Position numbers and translations under genes: made by a program. From Lytechinus pictus (Eukaryota), in the NCBI RefSeq assembly GCF_037042905.1, contig NC_087258.1, forward strand, positions 11,532,001 to 11,596,000: 64,000 bases of DNA, in the 5' to 3' direction. The notes under the pieces were generated by a model. The model saw nothing but the letters and a program-made list of their open reading frames with translations. It did no database searches and was not told the DNA's origin. Below are positions 2,957 through 43,000 of this stretch, piece after piece; position 1 is the first letter of the stretch, and each line of letters begins with the position of its first letter.

Positions 2957-5889
2957 GTTATGACAATGATGAACAAAGAAAGCATGATAATGGCATGTGA
3001 AGAAAGTAAGCCAGAAATAAAGGAAAGGTGAGTTAAAAAAGATAGAATAAAGATAAAACAAAATGGAAAATCATGTTATCCCATGACTGAGACTGAATTA
3101 ACACAAAAAAGGAGAAGTCACATAGGTGGACATGTTGAAGAAATGAACAAGGAAGTTTAGATTTGGTGAATAATATGCTATGAATGCTATGGCGTTGATT
3201 GTAGATGCATGGATTCTTTACCAAATTGGGTTTCGCGATAATTAATGTATCTTCCCGTTTCATTTGTAATAATGCGAATAAATTTATGCTAATAAGCTGA
3301 GGCTTAATAGCTCTCGGATTTTCTACGGTGCCCAGAATTCTTAAAGCTTTATTTCTGATTTGTATATGTTGGAAATTGGGGGGGGGGGGGAATAAACCAA
3401 CATGATGATGAAATAAGTCACATATCCGGAAATAAAATCAATGGTTGGGCATTCCATCGGGCCTTCAAAATGTTATTTGAAATAAAACACCAAATAAAAC
3501 ATCTTTTCTTCTGAAGGAAAGTGCTAGTAATACCATTAAAAATCATTGATGATCATAATATACACCACACTGGCATCAATATGTAACTCACCCGTAGGGC
3601 TAGGCATGGGTCAATCCGAAAACATGGAAAAGCCGCCTTTGTATGCGGCGGCAAAGGTGTCCCTCAGTATCCAAAACTGCGCAACGACATGATAATTTCA
3701 ACTATTCAAGTTCAAAATGGATAATAACTACCAGATAATGACACGAAATCACACAGCAGAGGGTTCGCTTCCTCTAACATGTCTAAGCAGGCCTGTAAAT
3801 ATATCTACGTTAGCTGTCCTTTTCAATTCAACAGTGCAACCGAATCCAACAGATACGAAATATGGATTCGTATTATACAGACATGACAAAATCTCTTCTA
3901 GGCTTACATTACATGTGAGTATACAGTTTCGGGTTTCTACACAATACAGACAGAAAACCAACAAGAAAGGCAGAAAAAAGCAACAATACAGGCAAGATCT
4001 CAAGCAGAATGGTATCATATTATATGAGTGCTTCCTCCTCTGGCTCAGCATGCATGAAGCCGGGGTAGCGAAAGGATGGCATAGAGGGAACTAACCCCCC
4101 ATAGGCCTGTAATATTGGTACGTATCGACTGATGAGACTCACAAATGTCGATATTGAATAAATCAACCATTCGGAGATGAAAACTATATACTAGTAATCA
4201 ATGGATTTCCGCCAGGCCCGTGGAATCGACCACAGAAAAAGATCTAGATAGGCCTACATGTGAAAGATAGAAAGAATGAAAAAATAAGAGGGTCGTGAAG
4301 GAATGAGACTGAACGAAGAGAGAAAAAGAAAGAGAGAGAGAGGGAGGGGTGGAGAGAGAGAGAGAGAGAGAAAGCTTGGTAGAATGCTTACCAGGGAGTG
4401 GAGACAGTACAAGAATTTATGCGACTATGCTAGTATCTGATGACCGGGGTATATCGGATCTCACTTCTTCTTTCGGTTCTATTGTGATAACCAACTCACC
4501 CACTATTATGATACAATAAAAGGCCTATATTATTAATTTTCATCGCCGAGGTCATGACCTAAAAATATTGCTGGTCAGTCAATATCATAAACTGTAACTG
4601 GTTCTTAAGGAGTAAGGAGGATGTTATAAAGATTTAGTGCACTCCTTGTAAGCGACCACTGGATTGGTCAAATAATAAAAATTACCGACCAAAATAAAAA
4701 TCAACCAACAAACTTTGGAACCAATTGTTCTTTTTATTTTGTCTTTTTTTGTCGAAAAACATTCCAAACCAATCAACAATATGCCATTAAAATAATTTAG
4801 TTTTGATAGGTCTGGAGTCTGTTTCATTTGTGTAACTATAAGAGTTTAGATATCATCCAATAACTAATGATTATATCCTCGTTTGTTTCCAGTTACCCTT
4901 CCAGTGAAACTGGGCCTAATATTACAAGACACCCTTCATTATAAATCTTTAGGGTCAACTTGTTTCTGTTGACAAGGTTGATTTGCCGAAATAAAGAATA
5001 TAGATTTATTTTTCCCGGATGTGTATTTCGTTGGTTTTGATACTGTTCCATAATCCGTGACTTGCAGGAGAGAGGGTAGCATTACGGGGGGGGGGGGGGC
5101 GACCTCCACTGTGAGTATGATGATCTTTCAAGAATTGAAAAAGGAGAAAAGTAAAAATAAAGAGATGAAGATGAAAGAATAAAGAGTATCAGAACGAGAG
5201 GTATGGGTCATGTAAATATATACCCCTGCTTAATGGAGAAGATTTTAAATGACATCACCATGATTGATGTCATCTTACCCTATTAAATTACTCTGGCGCC
5301 GCCCCTAAGGTAGACTTTGCTCCAATGAGGTCAATCGCACTGTATGGTCATCTTATAGCTTTGTGAGTTATAGACCTGTCTTGATACATATACATTCTGA
5401 TAAGACAACTGAAAATATATTATAAAAATTTGAAGAAATTACGACGCTTCAATATATTTAGAGTCAGTATTGTTCCTATAGTGGTATGACTTTTGCAATA
5501 TGTATAGTTGAAAAATATGTTATCATTCTATTTGGAAAATATATATACATCTTAAAACTACAATATAAAATCGACACAGTACGGGTTAAAGAATCAGAAA
5601 ATGCTTGAAAAGTTATGATGCTTGTTGGCTTGGCTTTTACTGAACTTTTCGTGAGAAGTGCCCACTTCTGCTTTTGCTTCTTTTAAATACCCCCACCCCA
5701 ACCAAAAGAAAGTTTCTTAGAAATCTTGGACATAAATAAATTCCGTTTTAGGCCCATTCACTTTTTTTCTAGGTCTATATACCTCCAGTTATTGTCGACA
5801 ATCTTCTTCATGCATGTATATTCAAATAGCTACAGCACTGTCTATGACTTTTTCACAATCATGACAATGGAACCATAATATCTCCCCTT

Positions 5890-38061: not shown

Positions 38062-38555
38062 TAATTCACCACTCAGTAAATTCATATCACACTAAATGTT
38101 ACCAAGTAGCAAAAGAAACCATATCAGTTTCTCTGTATGAATAAAACGATATGCTAATTGATTCTCTGTAGTACTACTGATGATTATCTCAAAATGTATA
38201 TTTTTACGACTAGTTATTTACAGCACACAGTCAATGAGAGACAACAAATTGTTGATCAGTTCGCTTCCCATTTAAAAACCCTTATTCTCATGTATCTGTG
38301 ACAAACGACCAATGGTCTGTCATTGGAAATATCAATAATGGCTATTGCCGTTCTGGGGTCGGTTTCACCGGTGTGATAGCGGGATAAATGGGAAGGTCAC
38401 CCTGGGGTAGAAGCAAATTAACGAGTATTTGGCGAATATGGCGAGTTAAGATCTTCAAATTTTGGACGTCGCATACGGTCATCAATCACACCTTGCATTC
38501 CATAAAATTTCTTCTCAGGAAGTATCAAAGAAGATTACTAGTGCATTAAAAACTA

Positions 38556-39713
38556 TTATACAACTCCCAAGAATGTTCTGTAATCTGATTGGTCCAAATC
38601 GGATCACATGATATTCAGCGAATTGCACTACTGCATCCCAAATGCACTATCCTGCACTCTGACGTCATACCAAAAGTACCATCCTGCACTCTGTGAGGTC
38701 AGAGTGCAGGATAGTGCGAGGTCTGGACTTATCTATAATTATGGAGAATTTAGATCAAATATAGCATTCGGGGCAATAACATGGGGCAGGAGGGGGTTGT
38801 ATAAAACAAACAATGTACGCATTCTTGTGCATAGAGGACCTAAATCAGTAAATAATGAACTCTGTGCTCGACTCGACAAATGGATATACCGCACTCAGTC
38901 CTGCGGACCTCGGTGTGGTATATTATACAAATAATGCACGTAAGCGCTGGCATGCAGGGCCAAATAATGAACGATGTGCGAGAAGAGCCAATGGATATAC
39001 CGCACAGAGGTCCGCAGGACCGAGTGCGGTTTATCCATTTGGCGAGTCGAGCACAGAGTTCATTATTTACGTTTACGTCCTCTATGCACAAGAGTGCCAG
39101 GGGCGGATCCAGCTTTTTATAAAGGGGGGGTTGGGGTGGTATGCATGGGAGCGTAGCGACCGAGTCCAAGCGAGCGGAGCGAGCGAGGGGGGAGGGTGTG
39201 GGAGGGGGGTGTCCCCCCTCCCACAGTAGGGAAAATTTTTGAAAATCTGTGTGTGAAAATGGCGTTTTCTTGCATCTAAAAAAGATAAGATTTTAAAAAA
39301 TGGTCCCCGGATTTTTTTTTTTGGGGGGGGAGGTTGCAACCCCCCCAACCCCCCTCTAGATCCGCTTCTAAGTGCGTGCATCGTTTGTTTTATACAACCC
39401 CCTCCTCTCCCATGTTACTGACTTGCCCCGAATGCTATTATTTGATCTAAATTCTAGATAATTCTAGATCATTCCAGACCTCGTACTATCCTGTACTCTG
39501 ACGTCAGAGTGCAGGATAGTACTTTTGGTATGACGTCAGAGTGCAGGATAGTGCATTTTGGATGCAATAGTGCAATTCGCTGAATATCATGTGATCCGAT
39601 TTGGACCAATCAGATTACAGAACATTCTTGGGAGTTGTATAACCATCGGCTATTCTCGCACATCGTTCATTATTTGGCCCTGCATGCACGCGCTTACGTG
39701 CATTATTTGTATA
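38556..39713. mobile_element. Composite inverted-repeat element with A-B-A'-B' organisation
   Basis: A 38556-38923, B 38924-38994, inverted A 38995-39642 (interrupted by a hAT MITE), inverted B 39643-39713 (4 mismatches in 71 nt versus B). Confidence 0.85.
39098..39370. mobile_element. hAT-like MITE nested in the inverted A arm
   Basis: caggggcggatccag ... ctagatccgcttcta; absent from the left arm; partial TSD agtgc. Confidence 0.8.
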
Positions 39714-40074
39714 CTAACAAGCACAGTTATTGTAAACGCTTCTATAAAAACATGTATAAATAATTTCGGTTATCGTGAAACATAAATTTTTTTTTTTAAT
39801 GTACATGGAATGGGAGGAGCTACTAGACTATGACCTCAAATATTTTAATTTCTAATTTCAACATGCATAACTCCGTTATTCTTCGTAGGATTTTTGTAAA
39901 ATATTCCTCATCAGTACATATCTCCATTTTTCTTAAAATCAATTTTACATCAAGGTATAACCTATCCTTTAGAGCAAAGGTTTGTTGTGCATTCCAACTG
40001 TTTCCTATTCGCGCCCTTTACAGGTTGTCTTTGATATCCCTTTGGAAATAGTCTGTCGATAGAACTGCATACAT

Positions 40075-43000
40075 TCACTGATCTTGCTCGAAAAACATGA
40101 ATTCCTGAAAGATAAACATAATTTGAAGAAACATATTTCTGTGATTTTTTTTTCCAACAGGGGAATGATAAATAAGTATAAAATTTGATAGGCCTACATG
40201 GGTTATTACCGTTAATCAGTGCATTTAGAAACTTGTCTATGTACCCATGATTGCATAATATTATTGTACATGCACTAATTATCACCATGATCATATTGGT
40301 AAACATCTTTACGCTGATTACACAAATACGGACATGAAACATAAAATTGTCCATAAATTATTCATTGCAGGGGGAAAATGAGATGTTCAATTTAAAGAAA
40401 TAAGTAATTACAGAATGACTAAATAATCAATGGGAATAGTAAAGAGGGAAAATATAGTATAGATATTACCAAAACTATCAATTCTTAAGTTGATCGATTT
40501 CAAGAGTTATAGATTTTGAAAAGAAAAAGGAAAGATGTTATACTCACAATTAGAAACAAAGCTCCCATGAGAGTTGCCTTTGCTTTTACATCAAGATCTG
40601 AAGGAACTGTTAAAATATTAAATTAATTGCTTAAGATTAGCTTAGTGAGTTTATTATAAAGTTATGGGCTACGATTTGTAAAATTTAAGAATGATAAAAT
40701 GTAATCATTGTAATCATGGTAATCAAATAAAAATGGCCACATGAGGCTGCCTTGAGAGACACCAGCATGCATGCTTATACCGGTAAAATTTCATCGTTTG
40801 TTATTTACGATTTTTTGTATGCCTTTGTGATGTGGCAATATTTGTGCCATATGTATAAGTACTTTTATTTCATGTATACAATTTCAAAATAGATAGACAA
40901 AACTACAAAAAAACGATAGAAGAGAATGAATACTTACACGTCATACCAAAGTGATCCGCTTTCGTGAAGCATTCCCTCAGCCAACCTGACCATTGCTTCT
41001 GTATGACACCTAGTTCACTACTCAGGTCGTTTGACATCACCTGTAGTAGGTAACCATGACAACAGAGAAAGAAAGATTTTTCTTAAAATCTTTAACATAT
41101 AAGTTATGAATGATAAATTAATTTGGTGTTGTCATATCAGTAGCCTTGAGGCTAAACAGACATGACGGAGAGAGAAGGGTCATTTTCCTGCACACTGCAC
41201 ATATTATAAGCCGGACTAGAAAGTGTAAGATGTGTATTTTTGTGATTTGAGCTATGAAAACGAAACACGATACGTGCATTTTATGACAGGTATAAGGGTA
41301 AGAAAAACGAGTTTCTGGAGTTACAATAAGTAAATATTTCTAACCTGTAAATTCGGCCATGTTTATGGGAATAAGTCTATTTTTCCACAAAATAGGTCTG
41401 TTTTTTCCGGCGACCTATGCTATTTTGATATGGGCATGTTGTTGTAAAGGGGTAATATTTAGAATATGTCTTTGGAAGGACTTACTTTAAATTCAACATC
41501 ACATCTGCAGCAAATGGTTTGACAGATACAGCACGGTCCTCTGATCTTCAGGATCGGGTTCATGTCGGCGTCCATCACATCCATATGAGGGTACCACCAG
41601 CTCTTACTACAGACCAAAGAATTGAGTCATCATTAAAGAATTCAGCTTAAGTTTGAAGTAATTACCAATATTTGCATTATCTGTATAGCTGCCTAATTGA
41701 AGTTAAGTAGTATCCTCAGATCCCAACAAGAATCTCGATGGCTATATGTAGTATGTAATAAACTTACGATTCTCTTGAAGTATATAGGTTAGTATTAGCA
41801 TGGACCTACTACTCTGACTAGTAGGGTCATGGTATTAGTCTTTAGGAGACGTGGCAACTCAGTCATAGAGCAGTGGTCACTCGGTGTGCTAGCTCTTACC
41901 CCTTGGCAAGGCACCAGTACTTGTTACCAGGTCTCTCGGATACGACCTAAAGCTTTAGATCCTTGATTGCATACAACAACTACAGGCTTATAAATGATTA
42001 TCAGCAATCAGGTAAACCAAATATAATATACACTGTTAGAAAAAACAAGATTTACAGAAGAAAAATTAAAAAACAACTTTTACAGAAAGAAATAACAAAA
42101 TCATTCTGTTACTTGTTATAACAAGAATGATTTTCCACAATTTTTCTACAACAGATCTGTTTTAAAAAGGGGAAATCAGTTTTATTGCAATTAATTTGGA
42201 AGGGTACATACACCAAATACAAATTTTCTGTTATTTTACACAAATGCATGTAAGCTTACACAGTACAGTAAGATTACAGGTGCTCTCGACTTTGTTTGGA
42301 GGGTTTTTTTTTTTTTTTTTTAAGTATAAATTTTCTAACAGTGTACCATCATCACATTTAGCAAATGGAATGTTACATGCAATATGACAGTACACTTATC
42401 CCCCATAGAGACCTTTTAACGTATCAATCCTAACGTTAGGGAGTATTCGCTCTTTAACGCACGACAGATTAAATAAATATACAAAATGTGTTGTCAAATG
42501 CCCTTCATGACAATGAAGAAACAATAAGTCTTATGTCGAAAATTGGTGAGTGATTACATCAGTTTTGTCCTGGTTTCTGGACAAACGACATATTTGCAAT
42601 TTTTCGTCTGCTCCGAAACTTAGGACGAAAATGTTGTAACTGTTCCGGTTCATCCATTTTCGACAAAGCCCGCTTGGCTGTTCATTGTCATGAAGGGCTT
42701 TTGACACTAGATCTTCGCTGTTCTTGAATCTGTCGTGCGCCGTGGAACTAAAGTTCCTTAATCATGTTAATGTTAAAGATTGATACGTTAAAAAAGTAGT
42801 GATTGGGATGAAGACCTTACAGCTGTTCATTGTCATTTGACGTGCATTTTTCAATATATTTACAGTGGTCTTGAATCCGTTCCCGTTGCATTTGCGAATA
42901 CTACCTTCACAGCAAAAACTGTGGTGTTACCTGGTGTACATAGAGGACCACACCAGCTATTTTACACCGTTGTTAAATAGACAGTCCCGACCTTTCGTTG

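What the first reader, a model, noticed from the sequence alone, without database searches (positions are those of the whole stretch)
38556..39713. A-B-A'-B' array of TATA-bounded modules, unlike an ordinary foldback element
Seen: a 368-bp module A and a 71-bp module B are followed by inverted A and then inverted B. A simple palindrome would read A-B-B'-A', so the second half is a circular permutation of the first. Both modules begin TATACAA and end GG(N)TATA, and all five junctions contain TATA. B is also a diverged short version of the distal part of A (aaataatgaac..tgtgc...aatgg), and A ends in a hairpin (tataccgcac...gtgtggtata). Established: Crypton tyrosine-recombinase transposons have short terminal direct repeats and are thought to move as circles. 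Inference: these could be non-autonomous cassettes that integrate at each other's palindromic TATA core in either orientation, building integron-like arrays. No recombinase is encoded in this window.
Basis: partly seen in the sequence, partly recalled or inferred. Interest (0 to 1): 0.72.

Follow-up and report, generated by a model that had tools for sequence, protein, structure and literature searches.

The report
Nested copies of a Crypton-type repeat
The odd A-B-A'-B' pattern is one copy of a common 434-base non-coding jumping element that landed, upside down, inside another copy of itself; this is an ordinary nested insertion, but the element belongs to the little-studied tyrosine-recombinase (Crypton) transposons.

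Summary
A (38556-38923), B (38924-38994), inverted A (38995-39642) and inverted B (39643-39713) are all there.

The modular, integron-like reading fails. The genome holds at least 400 copies of one fixed 434-bp unit, E, made of A followed by inverted B. All 42 distinct full-length copies read here have that layout. No solo A, solo B or other order was seen, and both novel junctions are unique to this locus. So the array is E1 (A...B') split between consensus bases 363 and 364 by an inverted E2 (38924-39642).

Five filled-versus-empty comparisons show no duplicated target bases. Insertions prefer TA|NTRT, which resembles the element's joined ends (TA|TTAT). E lands in other E copies far more often than chance allows.

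E shares its end words, a roughly 180-nt 3' hairpin and an internal inverted copy of its joined ends with two 2.3-2.4-kb elements. Their only gene is a tyrosine recombinase (DUF3504 plus Phage_integrase).

Verdict: an ordinary nest, and a new non-autonomous member of the known Crypton kind.

The parts
38556..38923 (+). E1, 5' part (consensus 1-363): the host copy's module A. It carries the 5' end TTATACAAC, 32-bp repeats with TGACGTCA palindromes, the internal inverted copy of the joined ends (about 38795-38822), the ascending hairpin arm and the apical hairpin.
   Evidence: Joined to 39643-39713, it aligns end to end with the family consensus at 96.3% identity, with no gap at the join.
38924..39642 (-). 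E2: a complete second copy of E in inverted orientation (B plus inverted A), inserted flush between consensus bases 363 and 364 of E1.
   Evidence: 97.2% to the consensus after removing the MITE. The flanks read GGTATAT|E2|CCATC, against GGTATATCCATTGG in canonical copies.
39098..39369 (.). Unrelated 272-bp TIR MITE inserted into E2, with a 5-6 bp target duplication (39092-39097 and 39370-39375).
   Evidence: The genome has at least 771 first-look candidates; the 39 other scored copies are 92-97% identical over bases 1-272.
39643..39713 (+). E1, 3' part (consensus 364-434): inverted B, the descending arm of the long hairpin, ending ...ATTTGTATA.
39714..39717 (+). 3' flank CTAA of E1, a near match to the preferred target word (C/A)-T-(A/G)-T.

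Best explanation
The locus holds two copies of one non-autonomous transposon family, here called E (434-bp consensus). E consists of A followed by the reverse complement of B.

E1 inserted first. E2 then inserted into E1 in the opposite orientation. It landed exactly between the apical hairpin and the descending arm of E1's long 3' hairpin (consensus 363|364) and duplicated no target bases. Reading across the nest gives A, then E2 (B then inverted A), then inverted B. A 272-bp MITE is also present inside E2.

- B resembles the distal part of A because the two are opposite arms of a roughly 180-nt hairpin.
- The TATA words are E's own termini (TTATAC...GTATA) plus the two feet of the apical hairpin.

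E is a relative of Crypton transposons, which encode only a tyrosine recombinase.

Inferred, not shown: E is excised as a circle whose joined ends (GTATA|TTAT) recombine with target sites that resemble them (TA|NTRT). End-like TATA sites inside resident copies are therefore hit often.
For: Fixed layout:
- All 42 distinct full-length copies read are A followed by inverted B (47 found before overlapping loci were merged).
- The few other loci with E sequence are truncated, deleted or nested copies. L015 keeps a shortened B'.
- First-look candidates number 454 for A and 392 for B.

The nest:
- E1 without E2 matches the consensus with no gap at the join, at 96.3%.
- E2 is 97.2% identical to the consensus.
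- E1 and E2 are 94% identical to each other, so they are independent copies.
- Both novel junctions are unique among scored matches.

Flush insertion:
- No variable target duplication appears in the 42 copies.
- Empty-site paralogs for L005, L039, L019 and L056, plus this nest, align across the insertion point without gap or duplication.

Target word:
- Position +2 is T in 38 of 42 copies (p = 8e-16).
- Positions +1 (C/A), +3 (A/G), +4 (T) and -2/-1 (TA) are also enriched.

Self-targeting:
- 4 of about 45 copies lie inside another E, against 0.016 expected (p = 2e-9).
- One more copy abuts the 3' end of a related element.

Crypton link:
- L087/L088/L089 are 2.34-kb elements with a 448-aa ORF.
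- L062/L063/L081 are 2.39-kb elements about 99% identical to one another, with a 475-aa ORF.
- Their copy boundaries fall at TTATA... and ...TTTGTATA.
- They share CTGYAATCTGATTGGTC near the 5' end and GTGCATYATTTGTATA at the 3' end.
- They share the long 3' hairpin and the internal inverted copy of the joined ends.
- The ORFs hit DUF3504 at 49.7 and 27.8 bits, and Phage_integrase at 27.8 and 26.3 bits. They contain NRGRE, HxLR and GH...Y motifs.
- The E hairpin folds at -52.9 kcal/mol, z = -9.2.
Against: - No recombinase-encoding element with ends identical to E was found. The two coding families share motifs and architecture, not high identity, so E's actual mobilising partner is unidentified.
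- Short-read contigs do not bridge the repeat, so the assembly of this locus was not independently confirmed.
- L002 has 8 unexplained extra bases at the same insertion site.
- L051 shows 4-5 extra bases relative to diverged (75-77% identical) empty paralogs.
- The circular intermediate and the recombinase's role are inferred from the family literature (PMC3212892), not observed here.
Confidence: 0.88

Rival explanations
1. One reading: A and B are independent non-autonomous cassettes. Each integrates at the palindromic TATA core of the other, in either orientation, and this builds integron-like arrays of variable order.
For: All junctions carry TATA. Elements of this family do insert at TATA sites of other copies in both orientations.
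Against: A and inverted B are always adjacent in one order and orientation, in 42 of 42 distinct full-length copies. Candidate counts for A and B are similar. No solo modules were seen. The A|B direct junction and the A'|B' junction occur only here. B is the pairing partner of the distal part of A within one hairpin.
Confidence: 0.03
2. E is a Helitron2/Helentron-type rolling-circle element. Such elements also insert without target duplication, start with T, and have a 5' end that pairs with a site just upstream of a 3' hairpin.
For: Insertion is flush. The 5' terminal 12 nt are complementary to a site immediately upstream of the 3' hairpin. That resembles the asymmetric terminal inverted repeats described for Helitron2 (PMC3627910).
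Against: Elements with the same end words and architecture, whose boundaries are defined by copies up to about 99% identical, are only 2.3-2.4 kb long. Their single long gene is a 448-475 aa tyrosine recombinase, with no Rep/helicase. There is no 5'-TC or CTRR-3'. The flanks are not A|T or T|T. The hairpin is about 180 nt and reaches the very 3' end.
Confidence: 0.04
3. A conventional foldback or TIR MITE (cut-and-paste DDE transposon), with the pattern produced by local rearrangement or inversion.
For: There are short palindromic termini (TATACAA and TTGTATA, 7 bp), extensive internal inverted repeats and a TA-rich target.
Against: No target duplication appears in 42 copies or in five empty-site comparisons. 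The TIRs are only 7 bp. E1 and E2 are independent family members, 94% identical to each other and 96-97% to the consensus, with no shared private changes. That argues against a local duplication followed by inversion.
Confidence: 0.03
4. An assembly artefact: a collapsed or chimeric join of repeat copies.
For: The region is made of high-copy repeats, and short-read contigs from four runs break at every element boundary and bridge nothing.
Against: The structure is exactly what a precise nested insertion predicts. Both halves of E1 are in register, E2 is full length, and the MITE has its own target duplication. The unique flanks are present at 100% identity in an independent run (X19). Similar nests occur at other loci.
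Confidence: 0.03

Closest known systems
Non-autonomous CryptonA/CryptonI elements (for example CryptonI-1N1_RPro and CryptonA-1N1_OL; Kojima and Jurka 2011, PMC3212892)
   Same: E is short and non-coding, and far more abundant than the recombinase-encoding relatives. It has no long terminal repeats and makes no target-site duplication. Related coding elements carry a single DUF3504-type tyrosine recombinase gene. Crypton-1_SP is already known from a sea urchin.
   Different: That paper reports no terminal repeats of any kind in animal Cryptons. Here the family has defined features: a 7-bp palindromic end word, a 4-nt microhomology between the element's start (TTAT) and the 3' flank (NTRT), a roughly 180-nt 3' hairpin, and an internal inverted copy of the joined ends. 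The exact autonomous partner of E was not found.
DIRS retrotransposons with an internal complementary region (ICR)
   Same: Both belong to tyrosine-recombinase elements. Both carry an internal segment complementary to the joined outer ends of the element (as described in PMC13465315).
   Different: E and its coding relatives have no reverse transcriptase, no long inverted terminal repeats, and are only 0.43-2.4 kb long. Here the internal copy is one arm of a hairpin that ends at the 3' terminus.
Integron attC cassettes and the CTX-phi folded attP site (from my own knowledge, not tested here)
   Same: In both, a tyrosine recombinase site could be formed by folding one strand into an imperfect hairpin with extra-helical bases. 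Insertion is flush, and homology is needed mainly on one side of the crossover.
   Different: Those are bacterial systems, and no evidence exists here for single-stranded intermediates. E is one unit, not an array of exchangeable cassettes.
Helitron2/Helentron non-autonomous elements (PMC3627910)
   Same: There is no target duplication, the 5' end pairs with a site just upstream of a 3' hairpin, and the element starts with T.
   Different: The relatives encode a tyrosine recombinase, not Rep/helicase. The hairpin is about ten times longer. The target is not a TT or AT dinucleotide.

Membership tests
Crypton (tyrosine-recombinase DNA transposons) | Autonomous members encode a tyrosine recombinase as their only transposition enzyme. 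| tested here: met
   Elements sharing E's end words and architecture carry one ORF of 448-475 aa. It hits DUF3504 (49.7 bits, above the cut-off) and Phage_integrase (27.8 bits, above the cut-off), and it contains HxLR and GH...Y motifs. This was met for relatives of E, not for an element with E's exact ends.
Crypton (tyrosine-recombinase DNA transposons) | No target-site duplication; at most short direct repeats or microhomology between the element end and the target. | tested here: met
   No variable duplication appears in 42 copies. Five empty-site comparisons are flush. The element starts TTAT, and the 3' flank is (C/A)T(A/G)T.
Crypton (tyrosine-recombinase DNA transposons) | No long terminal inverted or direct repeats. 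| tested here: met
   Only a 7-bp palindromic end word is present (TATACAA and TTGTATA).
Crypton (tyrosine-recombinase DNA transposons) | Moves through an excised circular intermediate. | not testable with these tools
   This needs junction-spanning reads or inverse PCR. The public contigs laid were uninformative.
Crypton (tyrosine-recombinase DNA transposons) | The non-autonomous element shares both termini with a coding master copy. | tested here: inconclusive
   The shared motifs are TTATA at the start, a 17-of-18 nt subterminal word and a 15-of-16 nt 3' end, plus the same architecture. Overall identity is low. No further genome letters could be fetched.
   42 of 42 distinct full-length copies have the fixed layout of A followed by inverted B. 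The junctions of this locus are unique.
Helitron / Helitron2 | A Rep/helicase-encoding master copy; 5'-TC (or T) and CTRR-3' ends; insertion into AT or TT. | tested here: not met
   The ends are TTATAC...GTATA. The flanks are mostly A at position -1 and C or A at +1. The coding relatives have only a recombinase. The genome was not searched for Rep/helicase.
TIR MITE / foldback (DDE cut-and-paste) | Terminal inverted repeats plus a fixed-length target-site duplication. | tested here: not met
   Searches show no duplication. The TIRs are only 7 bp.

The most novel reading that the evidence does not exclude
In this Crypton clade the recombination site may not be an ordinary duplex site. It may instead be a folded hairpin. 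When the ends are joined, the long 3' hairpin extends 11-13 bp across the junction by pairing with the internal inverted copy, and it leaves a small bulge (about 2 nt) exactly at the junction.

This holds in E and in two recombinase-encoding families. Each family has its own 5' end word and a co-varying internal word. A fourth family, L085, shows the same co-variation for its 3' end word only.

The element would then integrate like an integron cassette or CTX-phi: one strand is exchanged at a folded single-stranded site and the intermediate is resolved by replication. That would explain three observations:
- flush insertion;
- homology required only on the 3' side (NTRT);
- frequent hits on end-like sites of resident copies.
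Probability: 0.15. Interest if true: 0.8.

Novelty: new member of a known kind. Interest (0 to 1): 0.33.

Why it matters
The A-B-A'-B' puzzle itself dissolves into a routine nested insertion, so the integron-like idea should be dropped.

The family is still a useful natural data set for animal Cryptons, whose ends and integration chemistry are poorly defined. The standard survey (PMC3212892) found no terminal repeats in them. This report provides:
- exact ends;
- five empty-site comparisons showing flush insertion;
- a target word that resembles the joined ends;
- strong self-targeting;
- a junction-spanning hairpin that co-varies across families.

Together these give concrete, testable constraints on how a eukaryotic tyrosine-recombinase transposon chooses and joins its sites.

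Tried and rejected
- **Target duplication.** I searched for a variable duplication at all offsets and lengths from 2 to 9 and found nothing above the shuffled-pair expectation. An apparent CTGTA duplication at L005 is already present once in the empty paralog.
- **Fixed TA or TATA duplication (Tc1/mariner-like).** The nest's flanks rebuild the canonical E1 junction only if insertion was flush.
- **Helitron reading.** Rejected because the ends and the coding relatives do not fit.
- **Assembly check with public runs.** Only short Logan contigs were available. They break at the repeat boundaries, so the check is inconclusive.
- **Protein structure search of the recombinase ORF by sequence.** No meaningful hit.
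- **Pfam scan of eight neighbouring ORFs between 32 and 50 kb.** No domains were found, so the nest lies in non-coding DNA.
- **Scan's notes searched by sequence.** Blank.
- **Literature search for Crypton hairpin ends.** No description was found in the held library.

Full report
**1. The observation**

Reading 38200-40100 and scanning for repeats confirms the four blocks.
- A is 38556-38923 and B is 38924-38994.
- Inverted A is 38995-39642 and inverted B is 39643-39713.

Inverted A comes in two pieces, 38995-39097 and 39373-39642. They are separated by sequence unrelated to A. That insert is a 272-bp TIR MITE (39098-39369) with a 5-6 bp target duplication. It has at least 771 first-look candidates in the genome, and the 39 other scored copies are 92-97% identical.

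- TATA is present at every junction.
- B resembles the distal part of A.
- A ends in a hairpin.

**2. What the genome says about A and B**

The window is C14:11532001-11596000 of an 812-Mb assembly. Other notes of this scan name the species as the sea urchin Lytechinus pictus; I did not test that.

Searching the assembly gave 454 first-look candidates for A and 392 for B. I fetched 60 loci and mapped A and B on them. A is followed directly by the reverse complement of B almost everywhere.
- 47 full-length units were found, 42 of them distinct after overlapping loci were merged.
- The remaining loci are truncated, deleted or nested copies. L015 keeps a shortened B'.
- Nowhere else is A followed by B in direct orientation.

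The consensus of the 42 copies is 434 bp, and I call this unit E. Copies are 94-98% identical to it, with a median of 96.8%.

**3. The nest**

A (38556-38923) plus inverted B (39643-39713) aligns with the consensus end to end at 96.3% identity. There is no gap at the join.

The stretch 38924-39642, without the MITE, is a complete inverted E at 97.2% identity. The two copies are 94% identical to each other and share no private changes.

The array is therefore E1 interrupted between consensus bases 363 and 364 by E2.
- Canonical copies read GGTATATCCATTGG at this point.
- The window reads GGTATAT, then E2, then CCATC.
- No base is duplicated or lost.

80-nt probes across the A|B and A'|B' junctions match in full only at this locus. 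All other hits cover one half only. The fixed layout is A-B', and A-B-A'-B' is a single nesting event.

**4. Anatomy of E**

- The element runs from TTATACAAC to ATTTGTATA.
- Bases 1-240 hold 32-bp repeats with TGACGTCA palindromes.
- From about base 250 to the 3' end, E folds into one long imperfect hairpin. As DNA it folds at -52.9 kcal/mol, against -24.4 +/- 3.1 for shuffles (z = -9.2).
- B' is the descending arm of this hairpin and the distal part of A is the ascending arm. That is why B looks like a diverged copy of the end of A.
- The hairpin at the end of A is the apex.
- Just upstream of the ascending arm (consensus about 241-252) lies the complement of the element's first 12 bases. 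The internal site as a whole is therefore an inverted copy of the joined 3' and 5' ends.

**5. How it inserts**

No variable target duplication exists at any offset or length.

Joining the two flanks of each copy and searching my loci found empty-site paralogs for L005, L039, L019 and L056. In each case the joined flanks align across the insertion point without gap or duplication. With the window nest, that makes five flush events. L051 is ambiguous, with 4-5 extra bases against paralogs that are only 75-77% identical.

The flanks are not random.
- Position +2 is T in 38 of 42 copies (p = 8e-16).
- Position +1 is C or A, +3 is A or G, and +4 is T.
- Positions -2/-1 are TA in about 60% of copies.
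- There is an unexplained TA at -9/-8.

The preferred site TA|NTRT resembles the joined ends, TA|TTAT. The site hit in E1 fits on its 3' side: in E2's orientation it reads GG|ATATACC.

**6. Self-targeting**

Of about 45 distinct copies, four lie inside another E.
- This window: consensus 363|364, inverted.
- L002: the same site, direct orientation, with 8 unexplained extra bases.
- L056/L017: consensus about 289, inverted.
- L058: consensus about 320, inverted, with its right junction lost to a deletion.

About 0.016 nested copies would be expected by chance (p = 2e-9). Sampling by best score favours loci with two copies, but not by that factor.

In L020, E abuts the exact 3' end of a different, related element head to tail. 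It applies to whole elements, not to modules.

**7. The recombinase link**

A DUF3504 search of the genome gave 30 loci. Two families among them have copy boundaries that coincide with E-like ends.

| Family | Loci | Element length | ORF | Copy identity |
|---|---|---|---|---|
| First | L087/L088/L089 | 2.34 kb | 448 aa | 92-96% |
| Second | L062/L063/L081 | 2.39 kb | 475 aa | about 99% |

Both families share these features with E:
- a start TTATA;
- the subterminal word CTGYAATCTGATTGGTC (17 of 18 bases in the L062 family);
- an end GTGCATYATTTGTATA or GCGTTATTTGTATA;
- the long 3' hairpin;
- the internal inverted copy of their own joined ends.

The 5' end words differ between families: TATACAACTCCC, TATAAAATAGC and TATAGAATGGG. 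Each family's internal site carries the matching complement. When the ends are joined in silico, the hairpin extends 11-13 bp across the junction in all three families, with a 2-nt bulge or small internal loop at the junction. L085 shows the same 3' end and internal pairing with its own words.

The ORFs are 50% identical to each other. They hit DUF3504 (49.7 and 27.8 bits), the catalytic C-terminal part of Phage_integrase (27.8 and 26.3 bits) and, weakly, the QRICH1 N-terminal domain. This is the CryptonA pattern described in PMC3212892.

A protein search of the genome shows dozens of such recombinase copies, of which at least 15 have open frames of 440 aa or more.

I conclude that E is a non-autonomous relative of these Cryptons. 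Its exact master copy was not found, and I could fetch no further genome letters.

**8. Mechanism**

Shown:
- the nest;
- the fixed unit;
- flush insertion;
- the target word;
- self-targeting;
- the shared architecture with recombinase-encoding elements.

Inferred from the Crypton literature (Goodwin's model, as summarised in PMC3212892 and PMC13465315): the element is excised as a circle, and a tyrosine recombinase recombines the joined ends with a target of similar sequence.

One detail stands out. The left junction always carries the element's TTAT and the right junction carries the target's NTRT. This pattern fits a crossover at, or within a few bases of, a single phosphodiester. It fits less well with a 6-8 bp staggered overlap that would give mixed products.

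Combined with the junction-spanning hairpin, this leaves open a folded-site, single-strand-exchange mechanism of the integron attC or CTX-phi type. That comparison rests on my own knowledge. I rate it at about 15%.

**9. Comparison and novelty**

Non-autonomous Cryptons are a known kind (PMC3212892), and nested insertions are routine.
- The end structure resembles the internal complementary region of DIRS elements.
- It also resembles the asymmetric inverted repeat plus hairpin of Helitron2 (PMC3627910). The coding relatives exclude Helitron membership.
- I found no published description of these Crypton ends in the held library.
That note led me to look for it here.

**10. What could not be done**

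- Public runs are held only as short contigs that break at every repeat boundary, so the assembly of the locus is unconfirmed.
- Only about 60 copies of E were read.
- Neighbouring ORFs between 32 and 50 kb have no Pfam domains, so the nest lies in non-coding DNA.

Noticed in passing
window 39098-39369: A 272-bp TIR MITE with GCGGATCYAG-type ends and long G and C runs sits inside E2. Its 5-6 bp target duplication lies at 39092-39097 and 39370-39375. The genome has at least 771 first-look candidates, and the 39 other scored copies are 92-97% identical.
   Followed up: partly
L020:1856-1975 (minus strand), C3 near 61.79 Mb: A full E copy sits flush against the exact 3' end of a different, L087-like Crypton end (...GCATTATTTGTATA|TTATACAAC...). 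This is a head-to-tail join of two families.
   Followed up: partly
L062, L063, L081 (C2:69.35 Mb, C9:13.84 Mb, C2:13.16 Mb): A 2.39-kb Crypton whose copies are about 99% identical. Two copies have an intact 475-aa tyrosine-recombinase ORF, so the element was probably active recently.
   Followed up: partly
E consensus; L087:2937-3133; L062 (minus strand) 3090-3278; L085: Joining the ends extends the 3' hairpin 11-13 bp across the junction, with a bulge or small internal loop (about 2 nt) at the junction, in E, L087 and L062. The 5' end word and its internal complement co-vary between these three families. L085 shows only the matching 3' end and internal words.
   Followed up: yes
flanks of 42 E copies (L002-L053): There is an unexplained preference for TA at positions -9/-8 upstream of insertions (A at -8 in 33 of 42 copies).
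   Followed up: no
L002:1430-2254: E is inserted at the same consensus-363 site of an older copy, in direct orientation. There are 4 extra bases on each side (ATAT and CTAT), and what follows is a doubtful remnant of B'. This is unexplained.
   Followed up: partly
G000 C9:18158973-18175384: Five hits to the B part are spaced about 4.09 kb apart. This is a tandem array of a 4.09-kb unit that contains an E fragment.
   Followed up: no
L056:1143-1580: At this nested insertion the base at +2 is T, whereas every empty E copy printed for that site and the family consensus have G at that position. It may be a base changed by the insertion event or a private mutation.
   Followed up: no
G000 C10:17052592-17052640 and C6:2350019-2350066: In two further places the 5' end of E is followed by 9-10 bases that match the start of B'. 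They may be more nests at the same site. The DNA could not be fetched.
   Followed up: no
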